Shown here: positions 17,301-63,449 of the stretch, piece after piece | Layout: each line of letters begins with the position of its first letter | Numbering within the stretch: the first letter of the stretch is position 1 | NCBI RefSeq assembly: GCF_021028975.2 | Contig: NC_059427.1 | Location: 110,050,001 to 110,114,000 of the forward strand | DNA length: 64,000 nt | Reading direction: 5' to 3' | Source of the DNA: Sphaerodactylus townsendi | Lineage: Eukaryota | The notes under the pieces: model-generated | The model's input: only the letters and a program-made list of their open reading frames with translations | Databases searched by the model: none | What the model was told of the DNA's origin: nothing | Program-made: the position numbers and the translations under genes

Positions 17301-18289
17301 TAGATTATTTTATGTATTATTATTTTATTGTTTTTATACTGTTGTAAGCCACTCTGAATGTGATGCAGTAGAGGAAAGCAGAATAAAAATCAATCAAACA
17401 AACAAATAAATATTCTTAATTTGGATAAGGAATGTATTATTTGGCTGTGCTTTGAATCTGTATTTGCTCAGGATAAAGCACCCCCCTTTACACACACAAT
17501 TTTAATAAATCCCTCAGTAAATTCAATATTCATTTTAAAATCTTTAAATCACATCTCTGTCATCCTTTTCCTGCTGACATTTGCTGCTTATAGTCCCCTG
17601 TTAAGGTAAAAGAACCCAGTTGTTTACTCCCTGAACAAACATGCAAGTAGTTTGCATGCTAGTCTGCCCTTTCCTCGTCCCCACAACCAACTCCTTCCAA
17701 GGCACCAGCCAACCCTCCCCTGGGGCCAGTTCACCTAGCCACTTGCTCCAGTGAGCCCAACCCTTTCCAGATGCCTTGGCTTTGGGCTGGAGAGAGGAAG
17801 GGGGGTTCCAGCCCTCCTGCCCAACACAGCTCCACTCTTTCAAGGCAAGGCCCCAGCTCCTTACTCATCCAATTTCCTCATATAGCTGATACTCATCATG
17901 AATGGCATGGCTGTGGCAGGCAGGAAGGCAGAAAGTGATGGTACCCCCCTTCAAGTGGTGATCATACCTGCCATACCTTAGATACACCACTGGATGTGCA
18001 TTAAGTGCACTTCTGATTACTTCAAAATCTCTGTGCAAACTTATCCTGTGTACAGCCATTACCCTTTCATGAAATATCTGTGCAAACTCTAAACTTCCTT
18101 TGAGGTTTATTCATATGGCAGCTGGAAAATTGAACACTCTTTCTACACTGGGTAAAATAAAACTATAACCATTTTCTGAGGAGCTCAAACTAATGAAGGT
18201 ACCTTATCAAGGCAATATATATTGCACTAAGGCCAATCTAGCTTAAGTCTATTTACCTGACAGACAGAAGACGGAATAGGTGTGGTTTT

Positions 18290-18630
18290 TTGCACTGAAG
18301 AATAAAAGACTCATGGTTCACAAATTTGCATAAATAAATAGGATTCAAAGTTTTATAGCAGATCATACGACTGATAATTTCCTGTGAAAATCTGAATTAT
18401 TCTGATTTATGTGACTATCTGCTGATGTAAAGCCAGTGGACCTATGCAAACAAGGGCATTGGACAGTGGTTATGCCTCCTATTCTTGCTCTGAAACAAAT
18501 ATTGATTTAAAAATAAGTTCTAGATAGGCACAAGGTGTAGATGTATGTGTGTGCACAAGGTGTGGTGGTTACAATTAACTAAAAGAGTGACCAATCAGAT
18601 GAGAGATTTGAAACTCAGCTATATTTAAAG
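18290..18630 (+). promoter_or_regulatory. RETN-A proximal promoter: TATA-like TATATTTAAA (18620-18629), TTCCTGTGAA STAT6-type site (18379-18388), GATA motif (18372-18377), octamer/C-EBP-like ATTTGCATAA (18324-18333)
   Basis: Aligns by eye with the RETN-B promoter (34141-34450, minus strand), including aact(c/t)agct(a/g)tatttaaagggg. Confidence 0.7.
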
Positions 18631-18649
18631 GGGGCAGCACACTCAGTTT

Positions 18650-18678
18650 CTTGCAAGAAGTTCCCAATTCTAGAGATG
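18650..18678 (+). other. RETN: RETN-A exon 1 (5' UTR; ends in an ATG in frame with exon 2); start approximate
   Basis: Donor ATG|GTGAGT at 18679, ~50 bp after the TATA box; positionally homologous to the RETN-B exon 1 donor. Confidence 0.7.
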
Positions 18679-18829
18679 GTGAGTACTATGTGCTTGTTTG
18701 ACAACGTGATGTAGGACATAAAAATGGATAGCTTCTTCTACAAGTAGATTTCAAGAAAGGCTGTCAGCTCAATCTTATCAAACTCAATTAAAAAAACAAT
18801 TTTTTAAATTTAGTGATATTTTGCCTTTC

Positions 18830-19010
18830 TTCCCAATGGGAAGAAAGTTCTCCTTTTCTCCGTTTTATCATCACAGCAACCTTGCGAGGTAGGTTAGACT
18901 GAGTGTCACCTAGTGTCACTGGTCCAAGGTCACCCAGTGAGTTTTCATAGTGGAGTGCAGATTAGAACTTGGGTTTCTCAGATCCTAGTCCAGCACCTTA
19001 ACCACTGGCT
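18830..19010 (-). mobile_element. Degenerate Squam3-like SINE
   Basis: tcacagcaaccttgcgaggtaggttag...caaggtcacccagtgag...ttaaccac, the reverse complement of the SINE at 52229. Confidence 0.65.
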
Positions 19011-19340
19011 CTGATTCTAATGGACTAAATTGATTATTTACCAGTTTATTATTACAGTAGCCCAACAGAGGTAATGCTTCAGACCATTCAGTAAAGTATC
19101 TGAAGCAGTTTTTCTTAACCCAATTGCAGATTCAAATTATATCTGACTAGGAAAACTTAAATTCTTCCTCTGTAGCTAGAGATGTATATAGACTAGAGGT
19201 GACAAGATCTGGGATCTTCTCCGTGCCAACCAGGTACTCTCTCTCAGTCATGGGCCTGTCCAAGTAGCAAAGTGGTAATGGAATTCAACAGACTGTATAT
19301 ATAAGAAGGATCTCCCTTTATTCTTGTTTATGCCCTATTA

Positions 19341-20949
19341 CTGTGATGGCGAACCTATGGCACGGGTGCCCAAGGCAGCACTCAGAGCCCTCTCTGTGGG
19401 CAAGCATGCCGTCATCTCCCCCTCCCCCTTCCTCCCTCATCCAGCCAGAGGTGGCTGCCAGCAGACGCGTTGGGAGTCATACTGCACAGGCTGACTGTGC
19501 ACAAGGCGCTCTGCCAGCTGGAGCTGAGCTTCAGGGAGGTCCTCTTGAATCAACCTGATTTGCTGTAAGTACCATCTACTGCCCCACGAGTACCTCCTCT
19601 CCCCCAAAAGGCTTGGGAAACTGGAGGCTGGCACACTTTTCTTGGCATGTAACTTTTGGGACCAAACTAAAACATTGGGGGTAGGGTTAAAAAGCGGCAG
19701 CCCGGGTGAGGGGCTCCCATTGGGAGGAGTGCATCTGCCAAGAGCAGAGGCGAGGGAGCACACCAGTGGTGAGGATTCGGTGCGGCTCGTCCTGCATTGG
19801 GATGAAATCCATTTGTTAAGGGCCTCCTTCCCCTGGGAGAGAGGAGCATGATGGGGAACTTTCAAGTGCCTGGGGGCCCAGGTCAGGGAGGAGAGATCTG
19901 TAAAGGTTCCTAGAGCTCGTGACGTGCCCAATCCCGTTACCTTCACAGGATCAGAAGCAAAGAAATTACCAAAGGACAGGAGGCATTTCACACGCAAAAA
20001 AGAATTGAGCTTAAATCTACGCCCCTAAATCCAACTGGCAGGAAAAGGGAGAGGAGGCATCCCTTACTGCTCGTGGAGTAGCCCTTCTTCCCCACTCCCT
20101 TGTCCAGGAATTAGAGGCCATTCCTGACAGAAGCAAATGTGGGACAGAAGAGGTCCATTCTCAAAAAATATTCTCCATGCTTTATTGCTTTCTCCCTCCT
20201 GCTGCATTTCTTGTGGGAAGTCAAAGTGCTGTGATGACATGTGAAGGAAAAACACTGTAAATCAGATGGCTTGCTCCACCAATTTAGCTTTCCCCTGAAG
20301 TTATCCTGCACCCCTTGCACAGCATTCTTTGCTTAGGATGGTGTCTTGTTGACGCTGCCTTTTTACTTCCTATCTTTGTGGTGGGGGGGGTTGTTGGGTT
20401 TACTGGGAAAGCAAAAGTTTTACTTCCCTCTCCCCTACTATCCCTCCCCCTTCCCCTCGGCCAGGCCCCCCAGTGTGATAATAGTGCAATTGTTCAGGGG
20501 TTTTGCGTTAGCATTAAAACCCTAAGACCCTAGCTCTTCCTTCCTGGGGAAGCAGTCTGCGGTAAGTGACCCTGTTAAGCAGCTTCGTTAAACCCTACTA
20601 GATTTACTTACGGGAAAAGAACTAAAGCGTGATCCTTTACCTGGGAGTAAGCTTGGTTGCTTGCAATGGGACTTTAGCTTTTGAGTTAACCCTCCTAGGG
20701 ATTACCGTGATTCACCCATTCAAAGTGTAAATGCACGGTTTGGACCGTTACAAAGCAAAAGCTCAACCTGGAAACCCCTCACCACCGTTTACTCTCCCCT
20801 TGAAAGTAACGCGCACCTTGGAGCCAAACTTTTTTTTAAACTAAAGCCTCAGTATTCAGGCTAAATTGCCGTGTTGGCACTTTGTGATAAATAAGTGAGT
20901 TTTGGGTTGCAGCTTGGGCACTCAGTCTCGAAAAGGTTCGCCATCACTG
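19341..20949. mobile_element. 1.6-kb non-autonomous hAT element (CAGTGATGGCGAACC-type TIR) in RETN-A intron 1
   Basis: Termini CTGTGATGGCGAACC / GGTTCGCCATCACTG; perfect 8-bp TSD CCCTATTA at 19333-19340 and 20950-20957. Confidence 0.9.
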
Positions 20950-21340
20950 CCCTATTAGAACAAACCATTTAGTTTAAATGCTGGTTGCAGTCAGCTGCTA
21001 GCCTCCCCAGCAAAAAAAAAAAAGTGTTTTAAGGGTAATGTTCAGAGTGACAACTAAACCATAACATAATTTCTTAGATGTTAGCATGAGAGGTTTTATT
21101 GTGATCAGGAATGAGTGAGATTAGTTTATAAATATTTACAGACTTTTAACTTTTTAAAAATTAGGTATGGTTCAAACGTAATTATTCCCCCCACCCCTAT
21201 TTTTATGGTAACTGTATCTAGTTTCACAGTTTCCCTGCATCAACAATACTGTTGCTGTTTTTTCTTTTCCCCTTTGTTTTCCTTTTGGCTTCAAACATGA
21301 GCTAGTTGATGCTCAGAGTTTGCCAAACTAAATCATGTTC

Positions 21341-22081
21341 TTTCAGGGGGATGACTGCAAAGCTATTATGTCATGATCAGAGAAGCTGCAATACGTGCAT
21401 ATTTGTGCAGTTGTAACCGTGGAAAACCTTCACCAAATGTGAATGTATGTGAATTTAGGAGTTCTGGTCACTTTCCTCTGCTTCTAGATTTTACTGCCCT
21501 GACATATCACAGTATGTGATGACAGTGATTATTCCTCTACAGGATTCTCTGCACAAAATGATGAAGGTTACCATATTCCTGCTGGTTGCTATGCTGATCT
21601 TCAGCCAGTACACACGTGCTCAGTCATGTGCTGTTGATAATGCAATTGACCAGAAGATTGCGACATCTGTTGCCGCCAAAGGTATTTTGACTGTGTGGAC
21701 CCTTAATGTTGCTTTAAATGCTGAGTTTTGCTGGTTCTTTCTGCACAGCAGAAATAAAACATCCTGCAGACATTTTTAAAAGATCAGTTTTGGCTTTTTG
21801 TGTTCTTACACTGTGGAGAACACAAGTATTGCCAACCAAAATGGTTCCTTTCCCCCCATCTGCTGGCTGACGGAGTTCTGGTCAATTTCAGAGTTGTGCC
21901 TGTCATTTTGTGTGCTGCTGCAGAGATTCTCCTGCGTCTGCCATTTGATGAAGTTTTCCATGGCAACAAATGTATGGCCATTGATTTGGTGAAGGTTTTC
22001 CACGGTTACAACTGCACAAATATGCACGTATTGCAGCTTCTCTGATCGTGACATAATAGCTTTGCAGTCATCCCCCTGAAA
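21341..22081. repeat. 98-bp inverted repeat (arms 21341-21438 and 21984-22081) flanking RETN-A exon 2
   Basis: Arms are reverse complements with one mismatch seen (gtcaTgatc vs gtcaCgatc). Confidence 0.95.
21558..21681 (+). CDS. RETN: Resistin-like gene A, exon 2 (signal peptide + N-terminal Cys/helix); exon starts 21543
   Basis: Acceptor cctctacAG|GAT at 21542. Reads MMKVTIFLLVAMLIFSQYTRA-QSCAVDNAIDQKIATSVAAK. Phase-1 donor AAA G|GTATTT. Confidence 0.93.
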
Positions 22082-22520
22082 ACAAAAACAAAAAAAGGAA
22101 AAACAACATGTAAGTGGGATCGCTAGGCAAAACAGACTTTATTCATCTACTTTTTACATGGAAATCACATGCAGATAAGCTGCAAAAAGAGGAAACTTCT
22201 GTGGGGAACCTTCAGAGAATCTCTACTGCAGCACACAAAATGGCGGGTGTGAATGATGAAAATGAAAGAGGTTTAGGGGGAAGAAATAAAGCATTTCCTG
22301 CCTGTTTTTGTTCATTCAGCAGGCCAGAAACATCTTCAGTCCAGGTTGGGGGGGAGGCGGGGAAGATTACTAATTTAGTGATTTTTGAAAATACTCAGGT
22401 TGAGATAAATAAAATGTTTTGAAGATATTTTGGGGGAGGGAGCTGTGCAAACTTCTTTCCCAAAATGCTTTTTAAAACGTCCTAAAGATGTTTTATTTCT
22501 GCTGTGTGGAAATCACCATT
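21731..22520. mobile_element. Degenerate palindromic MITE (possibly PIF/Harbinger-derived) in RETN-A intron 2
   Basis: cacagcagaaataaaacatc at ~21744 is mirrored by gatgttttatttctgctgtgtg at ~22487; internal cattttgtgtgctgc / gcagcacacaaaatgg symmetry. Confidence 0.65.
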
Positions 22521-24332
22521 GCCCCTCTACAATTCTTGATTTCTCCTTCAATGAATTGTCTGATTCTTACAAAAACTAATAGTTCTTGCTTAGAAGATCA
22601 GAAAGTCAAGCACTGTTACCTGTTGCTTTTCTGAATTTTCACATACTGGCAGTTTCTCTGGATGACTACTGCACAAGGGTGCCCAAGCCACCATCATTCT
22701 GTGCAAGCTGCAAGGAACTGACACTCATCCTCCTCCCCTTCCCCCTGTACCATGAAAGAAGGAAGAGGAAGGTGATCTGCGAAGGAACCTCCCAAGGCTG
22801 CTGCTTGCCAACCACATCCCAATGTCCAAATTGATGGAACTGTGGTACAGCTCATTGACAACCCTCCATCTCTAGTGTTTTAGACCTAGGACCTAGTGAA
22901 TGCATTAGCTTTGAACTGTAGCCTAACCTGATTAAGATGGTGGGGGCTACTGCACTTGCTACTGGACCACTGTCTTTTTAAGCAGAGAGCAATAGCCACC
23001 TCATCTTCTTCCTCACAGGAAGCATGGTTGAGGTGCGACTGCAATGGCTACTGCTGCTGCTTCCTCTTCTTTTTGTAAGGAGGAGTCAGTGGAGTAGTGA
23101 AATGTTCATGCAGAGTGTGCCTTATAAATGGAAAGATGGTTATTCAAAAATTAGACTGCCCATCTGAGGAGTTTTCCAGCTTCTTTTATTGAGCTTTAAC
23201 TCAATTTTGTCTGCCACTTAAGATCTCTCCATTATTCATTCACTGTTTGTTATTATATGAAGGAAAATGTATATAATATATGAAGAGCAAAAATGTATAT
23301 AATATATGAAGAGCAATTTGTACTTTTGCCCGCTCTTCAAAAATGTAGATCCAGCCCTGAGAAGGAGCTGCTACCTCATAGCCTCATCACCCACCATGAT
23401 GGCCTCACATAATTACAAAACAGTACAGGCCAATCATATGACCTGAAATCCATGGTTGCTTTAACTTACAATCTGTGTTTGCTCTTACACCCTCTGTAGC
23501 TCATTTTCAAAAAACTCTGCTATTATGACCAATCCTAGTTCATTCTTATGTTTGCTGAAATAAATTTCAGGTTAGATCCATCCTGAATTGAGAAACCCAT
23601 CATAATAGCCAATAACCTTACTTGACAATATTGAACTCTAATTTCTCATTAACAAGAGTCCAGAAACTGGCATCCTCAACTGCGACTTCTTCCACTTTCT
23701 GTGGGTTTAAAAAGCACTTTTAAGCACTCAAGACATCTCCCTGCAAGATTGTCAGACACATTCCTCAGTGTACTTAATCCTTTTTAGAGAGCATAGTAGA
23801 AAGCTCCTTAAAGAGCAGTACCCACTGTACATTTTTAACCTGCTGTAAAAATGAATATTTTAATAGTGACACTGAAAATTAATATACCATCCTAAGTACC
23901 ATTCTGTGTTCCTTGCTTGGGAGGAAACTGTTGGCATTTGGTTGACTATGGATCAGCCCAGTCCTGTGTGTGAGTGTAGTAAAGAGCTCTCCCAAACAGA
24001 TATCTGCAAAAAGGAAAACTGACATTTATTTCAAGTAACTGTGAATCACAAACATTGTTCCTGGTGAAATATAGACAGAAACCTTATATGCATGCACACA
24101 AAAGCTTATACCAAGATAAACTTCGTTGGTCTTAAAGGTGTCACTAAAATCAAACTTTTTTTCTGCTGCTTCAGGCCAACACGGCTACCCACCTGAATCC
24201 AACAGGAAGTCGTTAATGAAGCAGAGAATTGGAAGCTATTTCAAAATAGGAGCAGGAAAAGTTTAAGGGGACTGTGGGGGAAGAAGGTTTTCATTAATAT
24301 TTTTCTCCTTTGCTGCAAAGTGTCCTCATTAA

Positions 24333-24520
24333 CTGGGGTGCTGTGTGATTTCCGGGCTGTATGCATCTGTGGCTGGCATCTTCAGAGAATCTGAAGAAGA
24401 AGATGTCAGCCATAGATGCAGGCGAAACGTCAGGAGAGAATGCTGCTAGAACATGGCCATACAGCCCAGAAACCACGCAGCAGCCCAATGATTCCTGCCA
24501 TGAAAGCCTTTGACAATACA
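24333..24520. mobile_element. Penelope-like pLTR fragments in inverted arrangement
   Basis: Left part matches 8980-9070 with a deletion; right part is the reverse complement of 8927-9066. Confidence 0.8.
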
Positions 24521-24662
24521 TTGTCCTCATTAATGTTTTCCCCTTTTCATTATTATAATTTGTAATCAGGAAGGAGATAAGTATCTGTAGCCAAGGCAAG
24601 TATAATCCAGAGGACCCAAGATGGAGTTTCTATCAGAGCAGGTTTCTGGAGAGGCAGACAAC

Positions 24663-25625
24663 CAGGGATGTAGGTATAGATTTTTTTATGGGGGGAGTTC
24701 AGGGCAGGGCCACACTTCCCCCAGCCCCGCCCCTACCCTCAGTGCTTATCAAAGCAGCTCTCCGAGGCCAGGGGTGGCAGACCCCCCCCCCCCCCCCCCC
24801 CACTGGCTGGGCTCCCAGCCAGCAATCCCTTCTGCCCTCCACTCCAGGCAGAGGCATAGCTAGGGAAAATGGAGTCCGGTGCAAAATCTGAGGTTTGTGC
24901 CCCCACCCCCCATTGGGCAGCCACTGTGAAGCTGGAATCCACCCCCAAACAACATCGCTTTCAATGGTGTTTAAACCTGGGAACCCAGGTTCTCCTTTTA
25001 AATCCACCTTAAAGGGAGAATCTGGGGTCCCCAGTTTAAACAACACTGAAAGTGATGCTGTTTTGGGGTGGATTATCCCCCACCCTTAAACGGCATAACT
25101 TTCAATGTTTAAACTGGGGACCTCACATTCTCCCTTTAAATCCATGCCAAAGGGGTGGATTTAAAAGGAGAATCTGGGGAAATTTAGGGGGTGCCTGCTG
25201 TCAGGGGTGCAATTGTTAAGCTAGCAGCGCCAAACTTTCTGGGTATCTTTAGGAGACTCTCCTGATGATACCACCCAGGTTTGGAGAAGTTTGGTTCATG
25301 GGAGCCAAAGTTATGGAACCTCAAACGTGTAGCCCCATCACCTATTAGCTCCCATTGGAAACAATGGGGGATGGGAGCACTCCCTTTGGGAGTCCATAAC
25401 TTTGGACCCCCTGAACCAAACCTCACCAAACCTGGGTAGTATCATCAGCAGAGTCTCCCAACAAATCCCTGCAATTTTGGTGTTGCTAGCCTAAAAATGC
25501 ACCCCCTGCAGGTCAAAAACCAAAAGAACACTAAAAAAATACAAAAAACCCACAAACCGGGGCAGAGCTTTGGACATGTAATGGGGGGGTTGAACCCCAG
25601 AACCCCACCCTTACCTATGTCCTTG
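24663..25625. mobile_element. Non-autonomous hAT-like element in RETN-A intron 2
   Basis: Termini CAGGGATGTAGGTA / TACCTATGTCCTTG; 8-bp TSD CAGACAAC / CAGGCAAC (1 mismatch). Confidence 0.75.
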
Positions 25626-25828
25626 CAGGCAACCGATACATTTTTTAAATAATAAAGAAGTAAAAATGCATGGGTGATTGTGCAGAATATATCCCTGCTC
25701 GTATGGGAATGAAACTGATCTCACTTGCTTCTAGTTTTCTGTATAATAATGGGGGGGGGGGGGGTAAACTTTTTCAGCTTGAGCAAGGGTGGTTTGTGGT
25801 GACAGTAACCCCCTATCTTATCTTGCAG

Positions 25829-25906
25829 TGTCAGCAGCCCTGGCGAGAGCCCAGCTGGTTTGTATAAACATAAGTTCACGTGGAAGACTTGCCGTCTGTC
25901 CTTCAG
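25829..25906 (+). CDS. RETN: Resistin-like gene A, exon 3 (78 nt)
   Basis: tcttgcAG|TG...CCTTCAG|GTGAGT; (V)SAALARAQLVCINISSRGRLAVCPS(G); C-X11-C spacing of the resistin signature. Confidence 0.95.
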
Positions 25907-26176
25907 GTGAGTCACTCCATGTTGCTGTTGTGGAAGAAACTTAAAAGCTGGAGTAATTACAACAGGTGGGCATGAAGGAAAATTACTCTACAGGCATGTT
26001 TTAAAAAGATCTCATGGGTATTTGCTTGCCTTGGGAATACTTGAGTATAAAGTGCAAGCTAGTCTGTTGCAGGGCAAGCAAGCATTTGTATGTGATGATG
26101 CTGGAAAATTAAGATCTTCTGACATGTAATGGATCAGGCATTCAACTGCCTTTCATTGTAACATTTTTCCCCTTAG

Positions 26177-26307
26177 GCTACAAAACTACTTCCTGTTCCT
26201 GTGGAATGGCTTGTGGTTCCTGGGATATTCGAAATGAAAATATCTGTCACTGCCAGTGTGCCGTCATGGACTGGGCATCTGCCCGATGTTGCAAAGTGAG
26301 CATCTGA
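26177..26307 (+). CDS. RETN: Resistin-like gene A, exon 4 (Cys-rich head, stop codon)
   Basis: ccttAG|GC; (G)[42 protein letters not shown]. Completes C-X11-C-X8-C-X-C-X3-C-X10-C-X-C-X-C-X9-CC. Confidence 0.97.
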
Positions 26308-26354
26308 CAATTCCTCAGCTGCTTGCTGGCTCTCTGGGCCTAAGTACTTCGACC

Positions 26355-26360
26355 AATAAA
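26355..26360 (+). terminator. RETN-A polyadenylation signal AATAAA
   Basis: AATAAA 48 nt after the stop, followed by GT/T-rich sequence. Confidence 0.8.
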
Positions 26361-27905
26361 AGCATCAAACCCTTTTTGAGGAGTCCAGTGTTTGAGTATT
26401 TTCCTTGTAGACTAAGAAACTGGCGGGGGGGCGGGGAGGGCTTCATTGCCAATGGGACAAATGCTGCTACTCCATACTTATAGTAAGCTTGACTTTCTTC
26501 TGTTTATATAGGAACCCTGCATCCTGGCTTTTGCCCTGTAAAATGATTCAAAATCTCCAAAGTGGGGAAATGAAGGGAAAGATGTAATAGGTTTGTTCCA
26601 AGACACCCTAAAAAAGTACAGAGGACAATTGACTATCTGGAAAAAATATTTCCAAAGAAACCATAACTTTGGGACAGAAACAGTGTAAGCTTATTGCTGT
26701 CTGAACAGTCAGGCCTCACCTTAGTCACTCACCTGGCAGGTTGACACTCCCCACCCCCCACGACAGCTGCAGGGTGAAGGAAGAGGAAGAGCCACTTGAA
26801 GAAAACTCAATATGAGATAGACTGATTCAAGCAGAATTTCCCAACCTGTGAGTCAGGACTCTACTGTGGGTTGTGAACAGTGGTGGGATTCAAATAATTT
26901 AACAACTGGTTCCATTGGTGGGATTCAAATAATTTAACAGCTGATTGTTTACAAGCACCATTTTAACAACCGGTTCTGCAGAAGTGAGATGCTGAACCTG
27001 CCTGGAATCCCACTCACTGGCTGTGTGAATCCCTTTGAAAGTGGGTCCACTGACAGCCCTGGGGCCAAATGAGTGGTTCTTCTTGGGTAGGCTTTGATAT
27101 CCTAGGTACATTTTCTTTCCTCTTTCCAACTTCTCACATTCTCATCCACCACCCCCTGTGACAATAATGGGGCAGTGGGGCGGGGGGAGCCTTCAGCTAC
27201 TAGTAACTTCACAGAAGCAGCCGGAACAAGCAGGTGTTGCGAGACTGGAAAATAAATGGGAGCTGTGAAGAATGTCATGGAAAAACCAGAGGAGAGAAAG
27301 AGATATGTGTGTGAATGGGCTCTCTTGGTGCTGCTCCTTCAGTGGCCCAACCTCTTACACAATCCCCAGCAATGCCTCACTATCTTCTGCCTGCTGTGTT
27401 AGATATACTGCACTGAGTCCTTTATCACCTACTTCTTTACCACCATCTTTCATCATCATGTATCTCTTCAACCCAGCATATTCTGAGTGCACAGTTCCAA
27501 ATTCCTGCTTGCCCCAGCTGGCAGAGGAGGAAGAGATGAACAATCACTTGCTTGGGGTTCATAGTGTTGGAATAAGCGACTTCTGCACGCCTGGACAATG
27601 GGGGGCTGTGTATCTTTAAGCTGTTCTTTTGTTTGCTCTCCATGTCTAAGGGTCCGCCCACCAACTCCTCCTTCTTCACCTTTGGAGCCGTTTTCTTTCT
27701 TCTCTTTTGTACTGAGCACAATGGTAACGGCTACCTGCGCCTGCTGAGACTTTCCCACAGAAGCAGATCACACTCGCACGTATGTGATGGCATGTTAGAA
27801 TGCCCATTTGTTATAGGGAAGTTATCTCTTTAGTTTAAGGTTTCTATCTATGCTTGTGATCCAAAGCTACTTGAAATAAATGTAAGTTTTCCTTTTTTGC
27901 ATATA

Positions 27906-28137
27906 CCCTGTTTCCCCTAATATAAGACATCCCTGAAAAATAAGACATAGTAGAGGTTTTGCTGAAGTGCGAAATATAAGGCATCCCCCGAAAGTAAGAC
28001 GTAGCAAAGTTTTTGTTTGGAAGCATGCCGGATGAACAGAACACAGAAAAATAAGACATCCCCTGAAAATAAGACATAGCACATCTTTGGGAGCAAAAAT
28101 TAATATAAGACACTGTCTTATATTCGGGGAAACACGG
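27906..28137. mobile_element. Tc2-type MITE
   Basis: TA|CCCTGTTTCCCC...GGGGAAACACGG|TA; repeated AATAAGAC subterminal motifs. Confidence 0.85.
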
Positions 28138-29196
28138 TATTTGTTTGGAAGAACTTCTTTTACTGCACTCACACACTGGGCTGGGCTGATCCTTATTCAA
28201 CCAAATTCCAACACATAGTGGGGGCAGCTGTAATCTTTCTGTGATGTTTGTTGGTTTCTCACAAATACCTGGTTGGGCACTATAGAAAATGGATGCTAGG
28301 ATAGATGGGTGCCAAGATCATAGTTTGCATAGGGCACCCAAAACCCCGGGCCAGCCTTGGATGGGTCACTGCTTAAAGTAAATTTAAACCTGTGTGTCAC
28401 AGCAATACCAAAAAGATTGGGAATCACTGCAATAAAGGAAGCCACAGCCTGCACTTTATAAAACCTGAACCAGATTGTTAATGAAATGATTTTTGAAGGC
28501 CATTAATTCAAATCAGCACCACAAGCTGGAAGCAAATTAACTGTATATAACACTCACTGTTGCTTCCCACTACTTGGCCAACTACGCCATTTTTTCTCTC
28601 TTAATCTATTTTATGGTGTAGCACTTAAAGTGAGTTAAACTTCAATTATCATTTGTAACGATTTAGTAGCAATACAGTGCTCATCCAATCAATTAAATCA
28701 AGGATAAGATTGCAACCTTAGATTCTGACTGTGCCATCTTAAGAAGAGTTACACCTTTCTAAGCCAGTTGACTTCAATGGAATTAGAATAGTGTGATTCT
28801 GCTTAGGACAGTAAATTATATAGCCTTTAAGCCTATAGTTATATGAATATTGCTTGATCATGCAGAACATAAAGAGAAATTTGCATTCAAAAGAGCAATG
28901 TTGCCAGTGCAGGTCATTTATTTACTCTGGAATTCTACTGACGTGAGAACTGATTTAAGAATGCCAGAGAGGTAGTTATGTTAGTCTGCAGCTGCAAAAT
29001 AGGAGTCCAGCAGCAATGTAAAAACTAACAAAATTAATTATAGCAGAAGTTTTTGTGAATCAGAGATCTCTTCATCAGATGCACTGAAGAATACATCCAT
29101 AGCATTCATCAGGCACATAAAATGTTCATGGTTTTCAAAGTGGCCTCTCTTTGTGGCATCTCTGTATCCCCACCTTTCTGTTGCTTGTACCTTTAA

Positions 29197-29447
29197 GACT
29201 AGGACATGGAGTAATGGATTTCAACTACAGGAAGATAGATTCCACCTAAACATTAGGAAGCACGTCCTGATGGTAAGGGCTGTTCAACAGTGGAATATGC
29301 TGTTTTGGAGTGTGGTGGAGTCTCCTTCTTTGGAGGTTTTTAAACAGAGGATGGCATCTGCCAGGAGTGCTTTGATTGTGTGTTCCAGCATGGCAGGGGG
29401 GTGGACTGGATGGCCCTTGCGGTCTTGTTATGTTTCTATGATTCTAA
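29197..29447 (+). mobile_element. CR1 LINE 3' end fragment
   Basis: RTWSNGFQLQEDRFHLNIRKH...VRAVQQWNML...VVESPSLEVFKQR is the typical CR1 ORF2 C-terminus; ends ttctatgattcta. Confidence 0.9.
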
Positions 29448-29689
29448 CTACATCTGCTAAGAATATACAAATCATGCATTTGATGAAACAAGCTCCAATT
29501 TTGGACTTTGGTTTACTTTGGATAACAGATTTATGTGTGAACGTGCTGACATTCAAGACCAGCATGAATTGCTATTCCCATGTATTGTTGTGCCCATAAT
29601 CGAACCCAGCAAACAATCAGACACACCTGTTTGAATGAAAATCTTTTCAGTGGTATATTGGCATAGTATCTCTGGCATAGTCTGTGGAA

Positions 29690-29870
29690 TGGCATAGTAT
29701 AGCCCAATCTTATCAGATCTTGGAAGCTAAGTTGGTTCAGCACTTTGAAGGGAAACCTCCAAGGTAGACTCTGCAGAGGAAGGCAATGGCAAACCTTCTC
29801 TGCTTAATCACTTGCCTTGAAAACCCCACCAGGGGTCAGTAGAAGTCTACTGCAACTTGACAACACTTCA
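29690..29870 (+). mobile_element. 5S rRNA-headed Sauria-type SINE (degenerate)
   Basis: cccaatcttatcagatcttggaagctaag (5S-like) joined to aggaaggcaatggcaaacc...ccttgaaaacccc (Sauria/RTE-type tail). Confidence 0.65.
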
Positions 29871-30654
29871 CACACACACATCTCTGGCATGGTATCAAAA
29901 AAAGAGAGGCCATAATCCTGTGTTTGTATGCACTTGAGGCACTCTGTAAAGAGTGCCTGTAAAGAGTCAACAGAGTGCAAATTGGGGTACAGAACCAATG
30001 AAACCTAATTGGGAGGGACCTAATGCATTTTTCCGTGTTCTTTTTCCTCCATTTCAATAGTCCCTCTCTTTTTGGAATGAATTTTGTTTTTTTCCTACTT
30101 TAGACAAATCAAAGCACTAAAATTAAACTTTGGTATCATTAATAAAAATACTATCATGTTTTTCTTCTCTTCTCATCCACCTGACAGAGACCTCTGTGTT
30201 ACATTTGGCATTCAAGAAACATTTAATCAACCACTGTTTTTTGAAGTTTTCAGTTCGATGGCTTTCATTTTTTTAATCTTCTTCCCAAAGCCCAAATGTG
30301 CAATTTAATACAGCAAGTGTCCATGACAAGTCAGCCTTTGGTCCAGGCAGGATGCAGACATAGACTGTAAAATCATGGCCCGAAAGATCTCCCCCTCCAC
30401 TTTTTTCAGTATCTAGCCTGATGAAGAATTCTGGAGAACTCAAAAGCTGTGTTATTTCAGTTGGTCTCAAATTACATGACAACTTTTATTTTATTTTAGG
30501 ATTTTACAGTGGATTATGCAGCTACCAATGTCTTTGTCTACCATGATTATAAGAAAGTAAAGCAATTATGACTGCTATTTCAGCCTGCCTTTGAGCCCCT
30601 TTTGGAGAAAGTTATGCTAGAATATGTATTGTCGAAGGTGTCTTATGCTAGAAT

Positions 30655-30893
30655 NNNNNNNNNNNNNNNNNNNNNNNNNNNNNNNNNNNNNNNNNNNNNN
30701 NNNNNNNNNNNNNNNNNNNNNNNNNNNNNNNNNNNNNNNNNNNNNNNNNNNNNNNNNNNNNNNNNNNNNNNNNNNNNNNNNNNNNNNNNNNNNNNNNNNN
30801 NNNNNNNNNNNNNNNNNNNNNNNNNNNNNNNNNNNNNNNNNNNNNNNNNNNNNNNNNNNNNNNNNNNNNNNNNNNNNNNNNNNNNNNNNNNNN
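30655..30893. other. Assembly gap (239 N)
   Basis: Run of N. Confidence 1.
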
Positions 30894-31235
30894 TCTTGTT
30901 GGGACAATATATTAAAGTACAAATCACTTATATTGGTAATGGCATATATCCTACCACTCCACTAAGGAAAGGGGTGGCCTTCTTCTGGCCTAAGGACCCT
31001 TCCTCCAACTTAAATGGCTCTTCCTCTAATGGAAGCCTAAGCTTCCTCCAGTTCAAGATTGGATACATGCTGCTGTCTTCACATAAAAGTTGCAATTCTT
31101 ACTACAAATATGGAATGGCACCAATGCCCTATTAGTTCTGCAATGCTCCCAATTTATCATTGCTAGGGAGCTACCATTCCTCAATGAATTCAGGGAAAAA
31201 CTCAAACATTAGACTGTTCTGCAATTATAAATGCT

Positions 31236-31241
31236 TTTATT
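31236..31241 (-). terminator. RETN-B polyadenylation signal AATAAA
   Basis: tttatt on the + strand, ~47 nt beyond the stop, the same spacing as in RETN-A. Confidence 0.8.
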
Positions 31242-31287
31242 GAGCACAGTAGCTACAACCAAACAGCCAGTATGGTTCTAAGCACTA

Positions 31288-31427
31288 TCAGCTGCCGACA
31301 AGACCTAGTTTGCAACACCGGGCAGAAGTCCAGTCTATGTTCTGACACTGGCAGTGGCAAGCAGAATTGCCACGGATATCCCAGGACCCACAAGCCATTC
31401 CACAGGCGCAGCCAGTGGGCTTGTAAC
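31288..31427 (-). CDS. RETN: Resistin-like gene B, exon 4
   Basis: catcctAG|GT; (G)[45 protein letters not shown]. Confidence 0.97.
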
Positions 31428-31529
31428 CTAGGATGAAAAGAAAGAGGTGAAAGGGAAAGGCAGCAGAACACTTCACCTTGTCCTCAATTCCCAATTCTTA
31501 ATTCTCTCCCCCTCTATCACATGACTCAC

Positions 31530-31607
31530 CTGAAGGACAGAAGGCATCAGCCCCACGTGATGTCACACTGGTACAAATAATATCAAGTTTTGAGAGGGCT
31601 GAAGTCC
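31530..31607 (-). CDS. RETN: Resistin-like gene B, exon 3 (78 nt)
   Basis: ccttgcAG|GG...CCTTCAG|GTGAGT; (G)TSALSKLDIICTSVTSRGADAFCPS(G). Confidence 0.95.
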
Positions 31608-32460
31608 CTGCAAGGCAAGACAATCGTTACTTTAACCATAGTCACCCTTAAGTACATAAGAGCACCCTTAATGGATCAGACTAATGACCCACCTAGTCCA
31701 GCGATCTGCTTCTCTGGTAGACCCAGATGCATGGTCTGTTAATTTGAATGAGTGCCCACAGTCTCCAGAATTGCAGGCAAGGGAGGAAAATCCCCTTTAA
31801 TGTTAGTGCTCAGGTCAAGTACTACCTGAATAACTAAGCTGACAGCAAGAAGTAAAAGAAATTCACTGTCATTTCCAAAACAGAAATCACATTCAAACAA
31901 CTCTGGGTCATGTCTGTCCTGGTCATAAAAATAACATTTGTATATGTTTTTCCTTTATCCTTTATAGCAGACCAAATCAGTTCATCTATGACAAATACAA
32001 CAAATTGAGTATGGGCATCTTCAAGTTGCTGATATCTCATTCCATTTTCTTTCTTGGGGTGCTGCATGCAATACAAATCTGTAAAATAGAGAGGGAATTC
32101 ACAGGGCATGGAGGAGGCAGAGCACAGCTATGTGCCTTACCCAAAAACAGATAGCTATCCTGAGTGAAAGTGAGCTAGCCACAATAAAAGAGCTTTTCTC
32201 CTCTGATCTGGACTACAGAGGGGGGAAGATGAAAACTGGACCTTTCAGGCCCTTGCCTGAGGAATAATTTGTTGTGCTAGCAGGGCAGGAGGGAAAGAGG
32301 GACTATGGCGGATTCTGCATGGGCCAAAAACAGCAGTGTGAAAACAGTGAAAACAGCCCAATCCAACACACTAACAACTAACTACACGATATTGTCTCTA
32401 AACCTCTGCTCCCAAATCTCCAAGAATTTATCAAGCTGAAGGTTTCACAGAACTGAATAC

Positions 32461-32593
32461 CTAGTGCTTCAGAGGACGACTTGATCATCAGGTTAATCAC
32501 ATTATCAACTGCACATGACTGAGCACATGACTGAGCACGTATATACTGAGAAGGGATCAGCGCTACAAACAGCAAGAATATGGCTGTCTTCAT
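32461..32593 (-). CDS. RETN: Resistin-like gene B, exon 2 (signal peptide + N-terminus); exon starts 32612
   Basis: ctccacAG|GAAG acceptor; MKTAIFLLFVALIPSQYIRA-QSCAQSCAVDNVINLMIKSSSEAL; phase-1 donor CTA G|GTATTC. Confidence 0.93.
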
Positions 32594-34088
32594 TATCCCG
32601 GTGCAGAACTTCCTGTGGAGAAGAGAAATGTCAAGCCATCATATACTATGCCATGCCAGGGTGGCAGAATCTGGAAGGAGACAAGAGTTCCTTATCACAT
32701 AATAACTTTATAACAACCAATTAAAAATCTAACAAAGTTAATAAAATTCTTCCGCACTGTTGGAAAAGAAGCCAAAAAAAGCCAAATAAAGGGAATGGTT
32801 GAGGGACTTTATGTGAAACCATAAATCATCATAGATGATTTTATTTAGGTTTTTTTTTAAAAAAAAAACTATGATTTAAGATGCAGTTATTTTGGGGGGG
32901 AGGGAGGGGATAATTGTGATTATATCATATGTTAATATGCTTTTTTAAAATTGTAATCTGCCTTAACCCAAGCAGAGTGTAAATGTATTTTAAATAAACA
33001 AATAATACATACATAATTTCCTTTTTAAAAAATAGGCTGAGATTTTGTACATAGATCCATATTTGTTTTGGAATACACAAAGATGCCTGAGTATACTATC
33101 AGTCTATGAAGACTGGTATTGCCTACTCTGACTGGCAGCTATTTGCTATGATCTCAAGTAGAGGTCTTTCATACCACCCACTACGTGATATTTTTAACTG
33201 GAAATGCTGGGAACTGAACTTGAGACATTGTACATGCAAAACAAGCACTCTCCCTAGTCCCTCTCCTCCTGCATGCACTGGAGTGTGAATCCTTTCTCTG
33301 CGGTTTGTTTTTCTTCTTAAAATCCCCTCTCCATTTTCTTCTTCCTATTGAGTTGCAGATGTGTGTTTATAAGAATAATTCTGTACCTGAATTCTTGAGA
33401 GGAAAGCATATTGAAGGAATGATTTTGAGGGGGGGAAATAACCTGCACTCCCAAGGTCTGCCCCACTGAACCCATCAGCTGAGGTTACATTAACAGCTTA
33501 GAGATTTCATCCAAATGAACCCATCAAAGAAATGTAGCTAGAATGACCAGGACCCCAGAGATCCTACCACTTTCAGTGCTCCAAAACAATGATAAAGTAT
33601 GCATTTTGCATCTGCACTTCCAACATGTTCTTCCACATATCCATCGCCTGTATTTCTTCTCCATCTGCTGTGCAGTAGAACCGAAGTCCTGCAGCTACAG
33701 CAGGGAGGAAAGGAAGGTGAACTAATTTTTGTGTGGTCTTTTCCTAGCAATTGCTTATTTGTATTTGCAATTCAGTTTTAAAAAAACTGCTACAGATACT
33801 TCACTCAGTGTTCTCAAAACATTACCTGCATCAATATATGATATAATTGGTAATCAATATAGCCCATTAAAAACAAATTATTGAGAGTTTTTAAAAACTC
33901 TCAAAAAATTCTAAAAACTTTTTTTTTAAAACACACCTATGACCCAGATCAGAATGTATGGATCACATGTTAAGGCAGTTTGGCAAAGTTTCTATTGGCA
34001 GTTTCTGTTGGAATATACACATATATGAAACAAATTCCTATGTCCCATTATTTCCCCTCCCAGCTCTGTCTAACAAACACACACTTAC

Positions 34089-34118
34089 CTTCTAGAAGCA
34101 AGAGTTTCTTTCAGTGTC
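34089..34118 (-). other. RETN: RETN-B non-coding exon 1 (start approximate)
   Basis: Donor GAAG|GTAAGT at 34088, ~50 bp downstream of TATTTAAA; intron start resembles that of RETN-A. Confidence 0.7.
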
Positions 34119-34140
34119 ACTAATGAAGCACACTGTCCCC

Positions 34141-34500
34141 TTTAAATACAGCTAAGTTGCAGCATTTCTCAACAAGGTAAACTTACACTTTTCAAACAAC
34201 GTTAATCTCCTGTCCACAGCTGGACAATGCCTGAAGCAATTCCTTACACAATCTTATAAAATTTCCAGATTTGCTCAATATTTATGATGCAAAACAAGCA
34301 AAAATATTTACTTAACGATAGCAGATTTGGGGAAATAATGATAGTGCGGGGCTTTTTCCAGGAAATATCAATTTGGTGATCTGCTGAAAGAAACCCCATT
34401 TCTCAGTGCAAACAATGCAAACAATGAGATCCCTGTTCTTCAGACGAAAACAGCAACAAATATTAATATGAACAGCTTCCTCCTTTCAAGTTCCAGGAAA
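34141..34500 (-). promoter_or_regulatory. RETN-B proximal promoter: TATTTAAA (34141-34148), C/EBP-type sites (34243-34252, 34271-34279), two TTCCAGGAA GAS sites (34356-34364, 34491-34499)
   Basis: Motifs read directly; region is homologous to the RETN-A promoter. Confidence 0.7.
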
Positions 34501-61945: not shown

Positions 61946-62726
61946 GTTGCTAATGGGTCACGATAATCAGTCTCCTCAAGAAGTACCTGGAGTTGTCCAG
62001 CCAACACATATAATAGTGTCTTGCTAAAAAGAGGGAGATGCGAACAGCCAATAGAGAGTCCAAGGAGGGTTTCTTTGGGACTGGTCTAATGATAACATCT
62101 TTCCAGGATGCTGAGACCACTTTCCAAAGAGTCATTTATAATTTCCTTGATAGGTCACTGTCTCCTGGATAGATGTAATTAAGTAATCACAGAGGATAAA
62201 TGGTAGTTTGGACCCCTCCAAGCACTCTGTAGACCTCTCAGGTTGCAATAACTGAAGCTCTGGTAACTATGCTGCATGAATAGTGATGCTAAAGTCACAG
62301 TGAATGCAAATTATTCATCTGCAAAGTACCTTGTAAACATATCAGATGGTATGTTGAGATCTCAATAAAGTTTTAACCTCATCTACACCAAGCAGGTTTT
62401 TTGGCATGCTTAAAGCAGCTCCAGTGGATAGCTCTGAGCAGATGCAGGGGTGGGTGGTGGGGAAGTGACTCGAATATAAAACAGGTGGAGTGAGAAATGT
62501 GAGTAGACTGGTCTGCTCAGTTCTGTAAAGAGAATGGAGGCTTGTTAGCCTTGGGGATAGGGTCAGGACATCAGGTTTTAACATTCTAGTTCACAGAAAG
62601 GAGTGGAGTGTAGAAGACAGAGGAGAAGTCAACATGTGCTGTGTTTTGCCACCATACAGAAGTACCATGACCATTTTTATGCTTCTCAGTTGAAAAATAG
62701 ACCACAGAGTCTCTTTGTTCATATAG

Positions 62727-62808
62727 GTACTCATCATGGATCATCCCAGCACACGCATTGTCTCATCCTGTTTTAAGATGTCAGACCTTCTGGCTGAAGG
62801 AATCACAA
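62727..62808 (+). CDS. STXBP2: STXBP2 exon 3 (82 nt)
   Basis: catatAG|GTA; VLIMDHPSTRIVSSCFKMSDLLAEGIT(I); donor A|GTGAGT. Confidence 0.96.
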
Positions 62809-63101
62809 GTGAGTGACTTTGGCAAAGTTCTTGGTGCTCTGTTTCTGAGCAGGTACCTTCCTTCTTCTCTACATAACATTAGCTCTTCCTTCCATCCCAC
62901 AAATTATGTGTCAATCCAAGCTCAACAGGCTCCTCAGGTTGCTGTCTAGCACCATCCCAACACACTTCACTATGCATCTTGATGCCATTGATTTGAATGT
63001 TCATGTGGCCCATGTTTTCTGCAGGCCCTGAGAATTGTTTTGCTCCTTTGTCTTGCACCCATCCCAGACACAACCACCTGATACATATTTGTTTTCTTCA
63101 G

Positions 63102-63178
63102 TTATCGAAGATATTAACAAACGCCGAGAGCCCCTCCCCAGCTTGGAAGCCATCTATTTGCTCAGCCCCATTGAGCCG
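63102..63178 (+). CDS. STXBP2: STXBP2 exon 4 (77 nt)
   Basis: ttcttcAG|TT; [25 protein letters not shown]; donor CCG|GTAGGT. Confidence 0.96.
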
Positions 63179-63449
63179 GTAGGTCCTCAGTCTTGTATCC
63201 ACTGCCAGTTTCTGGAGAAGGCACAAATTTATTGGAAGGACTGATAGGGGTGGGGGTGTATGTGTGTGTGTGTATGCTGACACTTTTGGCTGTTACTACT
63301 TCCTAAGGTCTTTATGGGCTTCATGCAATTCCCACAGGAATTGTGTATGATTAAGGGTGCTTGGTGGCTGATTGAAGCCAAGGGAAGCTAGTAGCAGAAT
63401 CTCAAGGATGTGTGTTCTTGCTACTAACACACTATTTTCCCCTCTGCAG

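What the first reader, a model, noticed from the sequence alone, without database searches (positions are those of the whole stretch)
18290..34500. Paralogous resistin promoters differ by a one-base STAT-site spacing change (N4/STAT6-type vs N3/GAS-type)
Seen: the promoters align across ~350 bp, sharing ctgaagaa, ctcat(g/t)gtt, agcagatca, atctgct and the TATA block. At the homologous position RETN-A has tgataatTTCCTGTGAAaa (TTC-N4-GAA, 18379-18388). RETN-B has tgatatTTCCTGGAAaaa (TTC-N3-GAA, 34356-34364), a second identical N3 site (34491-34499) and two C/EBP-type sites. Known: STAT6 (IL-4/IL-13) uniquely favours N4 spacing, STAT1/3/5 use N3, and mouse Retnla is induced by IL-4/IL-13 through STAT6 with C/EBP. 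Inference: a reptile resistin pair may have split into a type-2-immunity gene and an acute-phase/myeloid gene, converging on the mammalian RETN/RELM division of labour. I have not seen this described.
Basis: partly seen in the sequence, partly recalled or inferred. Interest (0 to 1): 0.8.

Follow-up and report, generated by a model that had tools for sequence, protein, structure and literature searches.

The report
Gecko resistin promoters' STAT-like sites
Two neighbouring resistin genes of a gecko really do carry look-alike STAT sites that differ by one base of spacing, but comparison with other lizards shows the "N3" state is a local accident of this lineage, so the proposed immune division of labour is at best a weak lead.

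Summary
The window is from the gecko Sphaerodactylus townsendi. It holds two intact, already annotated, tail-to-tail resistin genes: A on the + strand (about 18650-26307) and B on the - strand (about 34120-31288).

The gene pair is old: Eublepharis has the same convergent pair, and Euleptes has both proteins. Eublepharis A keeps an N4 site (TTCTACAGAA), but in a poorly conserved stretch. B's proximal N3 is absent from Eublepharis, Gekko kuhli and Heteronotia. At that place these geckos, Podarcis, Sceloporus and a Hemicordylus promoter duplicate carry TTCCTGGGGGAAACCCC or a close variant, a kappaB-type motif. The S. townsendi N3 therefore arose by G>A substitutions, not by an indel in a STAT site.

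Such palindromes occur about once per 2-2.5 kb in this window, at or slightly above the shuffle expectation. RNA reads from a sister species show that A is expressed, but they neither confirm nor refute the TSS. The assembly gap lies between the two 3' ends and does not bear on the finding.

Verdict: ordinary promoter divergence between old paralogues. A STAT6 site in A remains a modest lead.

The parts
18290..18649 (+). Promoter of resistin gene A (NCBI 'resistin-like beta', P0035). TATA box TATTTAAA at 18622-18629.
   Evidence: Aligns with the B promoter and, at 72% over 656 bp, with the Eublepharis A promoter.
18379..18388 (+). TTCCTGTGAA, a TTC-N4-GAA palindrome 243 bp upstream of the TATA box. 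It is the only STAT-like site in the A promoter.
   Evidence: Eublepharis A has TTCTACAGAA at the aligned place. Unchanged in the sister species' DNA.
18326..18335 (+). ATTTGCATAA, an octamer / C/EBP-type match, conserved in Eublepharis A. Sceloporus keeps the octamer core (ATTTGCATGA).
18588..18607 (+). TGACCAATCAGATGAGAGAT, a CCAAT box block, 20/20 identical in Eublepharis A. The CCAAT is lost in all four gecko B promoters.
18650..18679 (+). Gene A exon 1. The start is inferred from the TATA box. It ends in ATG|gtgagt, and the NCBI model P0035 uses that ATG as its start codon.
   Evidence: P0035 begins M + DSLHK, and DSLHK starts at 21543. No RNA read lay on this exon.
21543..21680 (+). Gene A exon 2 (signal peptide and N-terminal helix).
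   Evidence: RNA depth about 18-24 in two of three runs of a sister species, with introns near zero.
25827..25908 (+). Gene A exon 3.
   Evidence: Mapping of P0035.
26178..26307 (+). Gene A exon 4 (cysteine-rich resistin domain plus stop codon). Poly(A) signal at 26355.
30655..30893 (.). Assembly gap, lying between the two 3' ends.
   Evidence: Flanks are collinear with Eublepharis. Not filled.
31288..31426 (-). Gene B exon 4 (resistin domain plus stop codon). Poly(A) signal at 31241.
31527..31607 (-). Gene B exon 3.
32461..32612 (-). Gene B exon 2 (ATG at 32593). Contains a 12-bp tandem duplication at 32511-32538 that encodes QSCAQSCA.
34089..34120 (-). Gene B exon 1, non-coding. The start is inferred from the TATA box at 34148-34141. 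Donor AAG|gtaagt.
   Evidence: TATA, exon 1 and donor are conserved across squamates. Heteronotia and G. kuhli gene models read through it.
34356..34364 (-). Proximal TTCCTGGAA (N3), 216 bp upstream of the TATA box and homologous to the A site. Specific to this lineage.
34439..34448 (-). Not conserved.
34491..34499 (-). Distal TTCCTGGAA (N3), 351 bp upstream of the TATA box, inside a strongly conserved gecko-B block that also has GAGGAAG.
   Evidence: Perfect in S. townsendi and Heteronotia; one mismatch each in Eublepharis (GTA) and G. kuhli (CTC).

Best explanation
These are the two annotated resistin-family genes of Sphaerodactylus townsendi. They form a convergent pair that arose by duplication before the Eublepharidae/Sphaerodactylidae split. 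Their promoters are homologous but have diverged in the ordinary way.

At the place in question the ancestral squamate resistin promoter carried TTCCTGGGGGAAACCCC. This matches the kappaB/Rel consensus GGGRNWYYCC; the factor that binds it is unknown. The A lineage lost the G run and the CCCC and now reads TTC-N4-GAA in both S. townsendi and Eublepharis. In the S. townsendi B gene, G>A substitutions in the G run happened to produce TTCCTGGAA.

The N4/N3 contrast is therefore a by-product of two independent decays of a non-STAT element. It is not a conserved spacing switch that assigns the genes to STAT6 versus STAT1/3/5.

Shown: the letters, the homology, the age of the pair, the non-conservation of B's N3, and the ancestral state.
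Inferred: that neither site needs to be a working STAT site, and that the real regulatory divergence lies in complementary loss of other blocks. A keeps the CCAAT box and the octamer. B keeps the kappaB-type element (in some geckos), the distal block and the GAGCAA block.
For: - Species and genes.
- The same convergent A/B pair occurs in Eublepharis. A-type and B-type proteins occur in Euleptes. The A clade has 100/99 support, with its deeper placement unresolved.
- Homologous site across 8-11 promoters:
  - Stow_B: TTCCTGGAAAAAGCCCC
  - Emac_B: TTCCTGGGGGAAACCCC
  - Gkuh_B: TTCCTGGGGAAATCCC
  - Podarcis g2: GTCCAGGGGGAAACCCC
  - Sceloporus: TTTCACTGGGAAACCCC
  - Hemicordylus upstream promoter copy: TTCCTGGGGGAAACCCC over the same 17 nt as Emac_B (BLAST: 18 nt identical)
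- The exact decamer GGGAAACCCC occurs once in each of those ~20-kb loci, always at this element: in the aligned promoter, or in Hemicordylus in its upstream duplicate.
- B has its own N4 site.
- N3 and N4 palindromes occur about once per 2-2.5 kb, N3 at and N4 somewhat above the shuffle expectation.
- In the A orthologue alignment the N4 site sits beside an 11-bp indel and has 0 of 4 spacer identities. Perfect 20-28-bp blocks lie elsewhere.
- The CCAAT box is kept in A and the outgroups but lost in all four gecko B promoters.
Against: - A's TTC and GAA half-sites and the N4 spacing are kept between two gecko families while the spacer changed completely. That is the pattern expected of a constrained STAT site.
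- The distal N3 in B lies in a strong footprint and is perfect in two geckos.
- Three STAT-like palindromes in 420 bp of the B promoter is more than expected (about 0.37).
- Mammalian RELM genes are known STAT6 targets (PMC3190958, PMC3876430), so the prior for this family is not negligible.
- Only two independent A promoters were available, because the Euleptes DNA was not on record.
- No binding or expression-response data exist.
Confidence: 0.6

Rival explanations
1. A one-base spacing difference makes A a STAT6 (IL-4/IL-13, type-2) gene and B a GAS (STAT1/3/5, acute-phase/myeloid) gene. This would be a convergent copy of the mammalian RETN/RELM division of labour.
For: - The letters are right and the position is homologous.
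- A's N4 is kept in Eublepharis.
- B has two identical N3 sites.
- STAT6 prefers TTCNNNNGAA, and RETNLB and Retnla are STAT6 targets (PMC3190958, PMC3876430).
Against: - B's proximal N3 is absent in three other gecko genera, and the distal one is imperfect in two.
- B carries an N4 site as well.
- The ancestral element was not a STAT site.
- STAT6 also binds N3 sites (my knowledge), so spacing alone does not separate the pathways.
- There are no response data.
Confidence: 0.07
2. Only the A half is real. After the duplication, the gecko-specific A gene gained a working STAT6 site (TTC-N4-GAA) in place of the ancestral kappaB-type element, and became an IL-4/IL-13-responsive resistin. The B sites are noise.
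For: - The N4 half-sites and spacing are kept in S. townsendi, its sister species and Eublepharis, although all four spacer letters differ.
- It is the only STAT-like palindrome in either A promoter.
- The A protein clade has a long stem, suggesting a changed role.
- A is transcribed.
Against: - There are only two independent lineages. At 72% identity the chance of keeping six letters and the spacing is roughly 0.1-0.15 (my estimate).
- The site lies in the least conserved stretch of the promoter.
- The nearest C/EBP-type match is 42-53 bp away, which is not a tight composite.
- No A-type gene was seen within 10 kb downstream of B in the three gekkonid loci, so A may be dispensable.
Confidence: 0.2
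3. Subfunctionalisation by complementary loss of promoter elements (the duplication-degeneration-complementation pattern). A kept the ancestral CCAAT box and octamer and lost the kappaB-type, GAGCAA and distal blocks. B kept those and lost the CCAAT box and octamer. The STAT-like palindromes are incidental.
For: Alignments and the motif table:
- CCAATCAG is present in A, Podarcis g2, Sceloporus, Pogona and Thamnophis, and absent in all four gecko B promoters.
- ATTTGCAT is present in A and Sceloporus; B has ATTTGCAC or GTTTGCAC.
- The kappaB-type element is present in Emac_B, Gkuh_B, Podarcis and Sceloporus, and absent in A.
Against: - These are consensus matches only.
- The kappaB-type element is itself lost in S. 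townsendi B and in Heteronotia B, so it is not indispensable.
- The timing of the duplication relative to the outgroups is unresolved.
- There are no tissue expression data for the two genes.
Confidence: 0.35

Closest known systems
Mouse Retnla (RELM-alpha/FIZZ1) and human/mouse RETNLB as IL-4/IL-13-STAT6 target genes
   Same: Same protein family. A TTC-N4-GAA palindrome lies in a proximal promoter (gene A), with a C/EBP/octamer-type match nearby.
   Different: In mammals, STAT6 dependence is shown by experiment (PMC3876430, PMC3190958). Here there is only a consensus match. Mammalian RETNL genes arose by a separate duplication with transposition to another locus (PMC4467842). The gecko pair is a local, convergent duplication beside STXBP2. 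The gecko site derives from a non-STAT ancestral element.
Human RETN promoter controlled by NF-kappaB p50/p50 binding (PMC6811637), and C/EBP control of mouse Retn (PMC4474570)
   Same: The ancestral squamate element GGGAAACCCC fits the kappaB consensus with G/C-rich half-sites on both sides. C/EBP-type matches about 100 and 130 bp upstream of the TATA box are conserved across squamates.
   Different: No sequence homology to the human promoter was tested or claimed. Binding is untested. The element is lost in S. townsendi B, Heteronotia B and the A genes.
Lineage-specific Retn duplicates in Sauria (Hu, Tan and Irwin 2015, PMC4467842)
   Same: Extra Retn-like genes at the ancestral locus next to STXBP2. 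That paper reports duplications in a lizard and in alligators.
   Different: That paper does not treat geckos or promoters. The gecko A/B pair is old, being shared by Eublepharidae and Sphaerodactylidae. Both copies are intact and the A protein is markedly diverged.

Membership tests
Resistin / RELM protein family (Pfam PF06954) | A match to the Resistin profile above the curated cut-off. | tested here: met
   Exon-4 reading frames score 75.5 and 73.3 bits against a cut-off of 25. The closest proteins are all named resistin or resistin-like.
Resistin / RELM protein family (Pfam PF06954) | C-terminal cysteine pattern C-x-C-x3-C-x10-C-x-C-x-C-x9-CC, a signal peptide, and a gene of one non-coding plus three coding exons. 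| tested here: met
   The pattern was found once on each strand. NCBI proteins P0035 and P0001 map to three coding exons each. A conserved TATA box, short first exon and splice donor lie upstream. The signal peptide was judged by eye only.
STAT-binding GAS-type element (TTC-N3-GAA) / STAT6 element (TTC-N4-GAA) | Palindromic half-sites with the right spacing. | tested here: met
   A has an N4 site at 18379-18388. B has N3 sites at 34356-34364 and 34491-34499 and an N4 site at 34439-34448.
STAT-binding GAS-type element (TTC-N3-GAA) / STAT6 element (TTC-N4-GAA) | Occurrence above the chance level. | tested here: inconclusive
   Window-wide there are 26 N3 sites against 22.5 expected and 31 N4 sites against 22.2. 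One site in A is unremarkable. Three sites in B is a mild, post hoc excess.
STAT-binding GAS-type element (TTC-N3-GAA) / STAT6 element (TTC-N4-GAA) | Conservation of the half-sites and spacing in orthologous promoters. | tested here: inconclusive
   A's N4 is kept in Eublepharis. B's proximal N3 is kept in none of three other geckos, and the distal N3 in one of three. Taken separately, the test is met weakly for A and not met for B's proximal site.
STAT-binding GAS-type element (TTC-N3-GAA) / STAT6 element (TTC-N4-GAA) | Binding by the STAT protein and cytokine-dependent activation. | not testable with these tools
   This needs EMSA or ChIP and reporter or induction experiments in gecko cells.
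NF-kappaB/Rel site (GGGRNWYYCC) | A consensus match conserved at one aligned position. | tested here: met
   GGGAAACCCC occurs in Eublepharis B, Podarcis g2, Sceloporus and the Hemicordylus upstream copy, and GGGAAATCCC in G. kuhli B. It is absent in S. townsendi A and B. This is a consensus match only; binding is untested, and other factors could read this G/C-rich palindrome.

The most novel reading that the evidence does not exclude
Geckos independently evolved a RELM-like, STAT6-driven resistin. After an old local duplication, gene A replaced an ancestral kappaB-type promoter element with a TTC-N4-GAA site and changed its protein. The ancestral-locus gene B kept inflammatory and myeloid control. 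This would be a second, convergent origin of the type-2 versus inflammatory split seen in mammals.
Probability: 0.1. Interest if true: 0.6.

Novelty: new member of a known kind. Interest (0 to 1): 0.28.

Why it matters
If the A gene really were STAT6-driven, geckos would offer a second, independent origin of a type-2-immunity resistin. That would help to explain why this family keeps duplicating.

As the evidence stands, the result is mainly cautionary. A neat one-base contrast between paralogous sites within one genome dissolves once orthologues are aligned. What remains useful is a map of the conserved squamate resistin promoter: the TATA box, the CCAAT box, C/EBP-type blocks and a kappaB-type decamer. 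There is also an old, previously undescribed gecko A/B resistin pair with complementary losses of these blocks.

Tried and rejected
- Euleptes europaea A (P0015) and Mauremys (P0007) are not on record as contigs. A third independent A promoter and a turtle outgroup could therefore not be read.
- The Gekko japonicus B promoter lies in an assembly gap. I left it out.
- No A-type exon 4 was found within 10 kb downstream of B in Heteronotia, G. kuhli or G. japonicus. Whether A is lost there or merely lies further away is open.
- The protein tree could not date the duplication. The A clade is solid, but the backbone is a polytomy.
- RNA reads covered A exon 2 in two of three runs of a sister species about 2% diverged. 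No read lay on exon 1 and no exon 1-2 joint was listed. With about 25-30 reads on exon 2 and a 30-nt first exon this is uninformative, so the TSS is neither confirmed nor refuted.
- Podarcis g2 has TTCCCGGAA 377 bp upstream of the TATA box. In the alignment it falls on the GGAAGCTGTT block, about 15-25 bp from the gecko distal N3. I did not count it as homologous.
- Pfam scans of the longest ORFs elsewhere in the window found nothing.
- The literature search 'resistin' + 'gecko' returned only 'resisting' hits. I found no paper on reptile resistin promoters.
Exon reading frames were searched by reference, and the database proteins P0035 and P0001 were used for mapping.
- No contig looked human.
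Full report
**What is there.** The window comes from the gecko Sphaerodactylus townsendi. The reading frame of the minus-strand resistin exon is 100% identical to the NCBI protein 'resistin-like [Sphaerodactylus townsendi]' (P0001). The plus-strand gene is the NCBI model 'resistin-like beta' (P0035). Both last exons match Pfam Resistin (PF06954) at E 5e-21 and 2e-20.

Mapping the two database proteins onto the window gives three coding exons each:
- Gene A (+): 21543-21680, 25827-25908, 26178-26307.
- Gene B (-): 32612-32461, 31607-31527, 31426-31288.

Each gene has, upstream, a TATA box (A 18622-18629; B 34148-34141), a short first exon and a GT donor. P0035 starts with M followed by DSLHK. 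DSLHK begins exactly at the exon-2 acceptor, so the NCBI model takes its M from the ATG that ends exon 1 (18677-18679).

The genes are convergent. Exon frames were searched by reference, and the database proteins were used instead.

**The gap.** The N run at 30655-30893 lies between the two 3' ends, about 400 bp past B's stop codon and 4.3 kb past A's. Both poly(A) signals (26355 and 31241) precede it. The sequences on its two sides match the Eublepharis intergenic region in the same order and orientation, about 290 bp apart there against about 320 bp here. It has no bearing on any exon or promoter. I did not fill it.

The promoters are homologous. They show 64.7% identity over 343 aligned columns, z = 7 against shuffles. 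The 61 bp around the A site find their best local match precisely at B's proximal site, score 29 against 17.5 +/- 2.5, reached by 3 of 1000 shuffles. That alignment reads AGCAGATCATACGACTGATAATTTCCTGTGAAAA against AGCAGATCACCAAATTGAT-ATTTCCTG-GAAAA. So, within this genome, the two sites do differ by one base in the spacer.

Two qualifications apply:
- B also has an N4 palindrome, TTCGTCTGAA at 34439-34448, between its two N3 sites.
- The motifs are common. The window has 26 N3 and 31 N4 sites in 64 kb, against about 22 expected for each.

**Orthologues.**
- Eublepharis macularius has the same convergent A/B pair. It has it twice, in two 98-99% identical segments 2.4 Mb apart.
- Euleptes europaea has both protein types.
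- The A proteins form a clade with 100/99 support and a long stem. The backbone of the tree is unresolved.
- The pair therefore predates the Eublepharidae/Sphaerodactylidae split.
- B-type genes, like the resistin genes of Sceloporus and Podarcis, lie next to a Sec1-family gene (STXBP2), which is the ancestral neighbourhood (PMC4467842).

Both promoters align well to their Eublepharis orthologues, at 72% and 75%. B promoters were also read in Gekko kuhli and Heteronotia binoei. Single or other-copy promoters were read in Podarcis, Sceloporus, Hemicordylus, Pogona and Thamnophis.

**The key result.** The homologous place reads as follows:

| Promoter | Sequence | State |
|---|---|---|
| S. townsendi A | TTTCCTGTGAAAATCT | N4 |
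| Eublepharis A | TTTCTACAGAAAACCA | N4 |
| S. townsendi B | TTCCTGGAAAAAGCCCC | N3 |
| Eublepharis B | TTCCTGGGGGAAACCCC | no STAT spacing |
| G. kuhli B | TTCCTGGGGAAATCCC | no STAT spacing |
| Heteronotia B | TTAATGGGGAAAGGTCT | no STAT spacing |
| Podarcis gene 2 | GTCCAGGGGGAAACCCC | no STAT spacing |
| Sceloporus | TTTCACTGGGAAACCCC | no STAT spacing |
| Hemicordylus, upstream promoter duplicate | TTCCTGGGGGAAACCCC (identical to Eublepharis B over these 17 nt; BLAST match of 18 nt) | no STAT spacing |

The exact decamer GGGAAACCCC occurs once in each of those roughly 20-kb loci, always at this element (in Hemicordylus in an upstream promoter duplicate). The ancestral element was therefore TTCCTGGGGGAAACCCC. 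It matches the kappaB/Rel consensus GGGRNWYYCC and has TTC...GAA six apart, which is not a STAT spacing.

S. townsendi B has the same length as this ancestral element and differs from it by G>A changes in the G run. Its N3 site is thus a lineage-specific by-product, not one side of an indel switch.

The distal N3 lies in a strongly conserved gecko-B block. It is perfect only in S. townsendi and Heteronotia. Eublepharis has GTA and G. kuhli has CTC.

**The A site.** A's half-sites and N4 spacing are kept in Eublepharis while all four spacer letters differ. The site is also unchanged in the DNA of a sister Sphaerodactylus about 2% diverged. This is what a constrained STAT6 site would look like.

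The evidence is thin, however:
- There are only two independent lineages.
- At 72% identity, keeping six letters and the spacing has a chance of roughly 0.1-0.15 (my estimate).
- The site sits beside an 11-bp indel in the least conserved part of the promoter.
- Perfect 20-28-bp blocks lie elsewhere: 18247-18272, 18481-18508, and the CCAAT block at 18588-18607.

**A broader pattern.** The conserved squamate promoter has these parts:
- a TATA box;
- CCAATCAG about 35 bp upstream of the TATA box;
- a C/EBP-type TTGTGCAAG about 100 bp upstream;
- AATATTGAGCAAAC about 130 bp upstream;
- the kappaB-type decamer about 210 to 270 bp upstream;
- an ATTTGCAT / ATTTGCAC block about 300 bp upstream.

Gecko A keeps the CCAAT box and the octamer and has lost the kappaB-type, GAGCAA and distal blocks. 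All four gecko B promoters have lost the CCAAT box. That looks like complementary degeneration after duplication. It rests on consensus matches only.

**Expression.** RNA reads from three runs of the sister species cover A exon 2 in two runs, at depth about 18-24, with introns near zero and molecules ending at the acceptor, 21542/3. No read lay on exon 1 and no exon 1-2 joint was listed. With so few reads and a 30-nt first exon, this neither confirms nor refutes the TSS.

**Literature.** TTCNNNNGAA is the STAT6 consensus, and RETNLB and Retnla are STAT6 targets (PMC3190958, PMC3876430). The human RETN promoter is controlled by p50/p50 binding (PMC6811637), and mouse Retn by C/EBP (PMC4474570). 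Retn duplications in Sauria are described, without promoter analysis and without geckos (PMC4467842). That STAT1/3/5 prefer N3, and that STAT6 can also use N3, is from my own knowledge. I found no paper on reptile resistin promoters.

**Verdict.** Most likely this is ordinary promoter divergence between two old gecko resistin paralogues. A STAT6 site in gene A remains a modest lead, at about 0.2, and the full convergent division of labour is at about 0.07-0.1.

Noticed in passing
L001 (Eublepharis macularius CM053280.1, 44.44 Mb) and L002/L003 (46.81 Mb): The whole convergent A/B resistin pair is present twice on one chromosome, 2.4 Mb apart. The two segments are 98-99% identical over about 16.5 kb and encode identical A proteins. 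This is either a recent segmental duplication or an assembly duplicate.
   Followed up: partly
window 32511-32538 (- strand, gene B exon 2): A 12-bp tandem duplication encodes QSCAQSCA just after the signal peptide, adding a cysteine. The repeat is shared by the Euleptes, Eublepharis and G. kuhli B proteins, but not by G. japonicus or Heteronotia.
   Followed up: partly
window 18677-18679: Gene A's exon 1 ends in an ATG that the NCBI model uses as its start codon, giving an MDSLHK extension before the usual MMKV start. Eublepharis A has no ATG there (CTAGAC|GGTGAGT), so the extension is probably not conserved.
   Followed up: partly
window 19331-20947 and 21343-21446 (gene A intron 1): A DNA contig of the sister Sphaerodactylus joins 19330 to 20948 and 21342 to 21447. 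The 1.6-kb segment is therefore missing there, and the 104-bp segment stands as only 4 other letters (GTTC). The 1.6-kb segment holds very high-copy repeats (depth up to about 10^6 in DNA and hundreds in RNA), so it is a likely transposon insertion specific to S. townsendi.
   Followed up: no
window about 62700-63530 (+ strand): Exons of a Sec1/Munc18-family gene (STXBP2-like) lie about 28 kb upstream of gene B's promoter. Its end of the coding region lies about 7 kb from the promoter in G. kuhli and Podarcis and about 4 kb in Sceloporus. The stretch from 34.6 to 62 kb gave no Pfam hit for the ORFs tried.
   Followed up: partly
L004, L005 and L006 (Heteronotia binoei, Gekko japonicus, Gekko kuhli): No A-type resistin exon 4 lies within 10 kb downstream of the B-type gene in these gekkonids. 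The protein search found no A-type protein from them either. The A gene may have been lost or moved in Gekkonidae.
   Followed up: partly
L009 6040-6330 (Hemicordylus capensis): A partial duplicate of the resistin promoter lies about 1.1 kb upstream of the proximal promoter. It keeps the TTCCTGGGGGAAACCCC element, whereas the proximal copy has a degraded version (GGAGAATTCCCC).
   Followed up: partly
window 34466-34476 (- strand) and the aligned gecko B promoters: The distal conserved block of gecko B promoters carries GGAGGAAG, an ETS/PU.1-type core, right after the distal N3 site. It is invariant in all four geckos and better conserved than the STAT-like half-sites.
   Followed up: no
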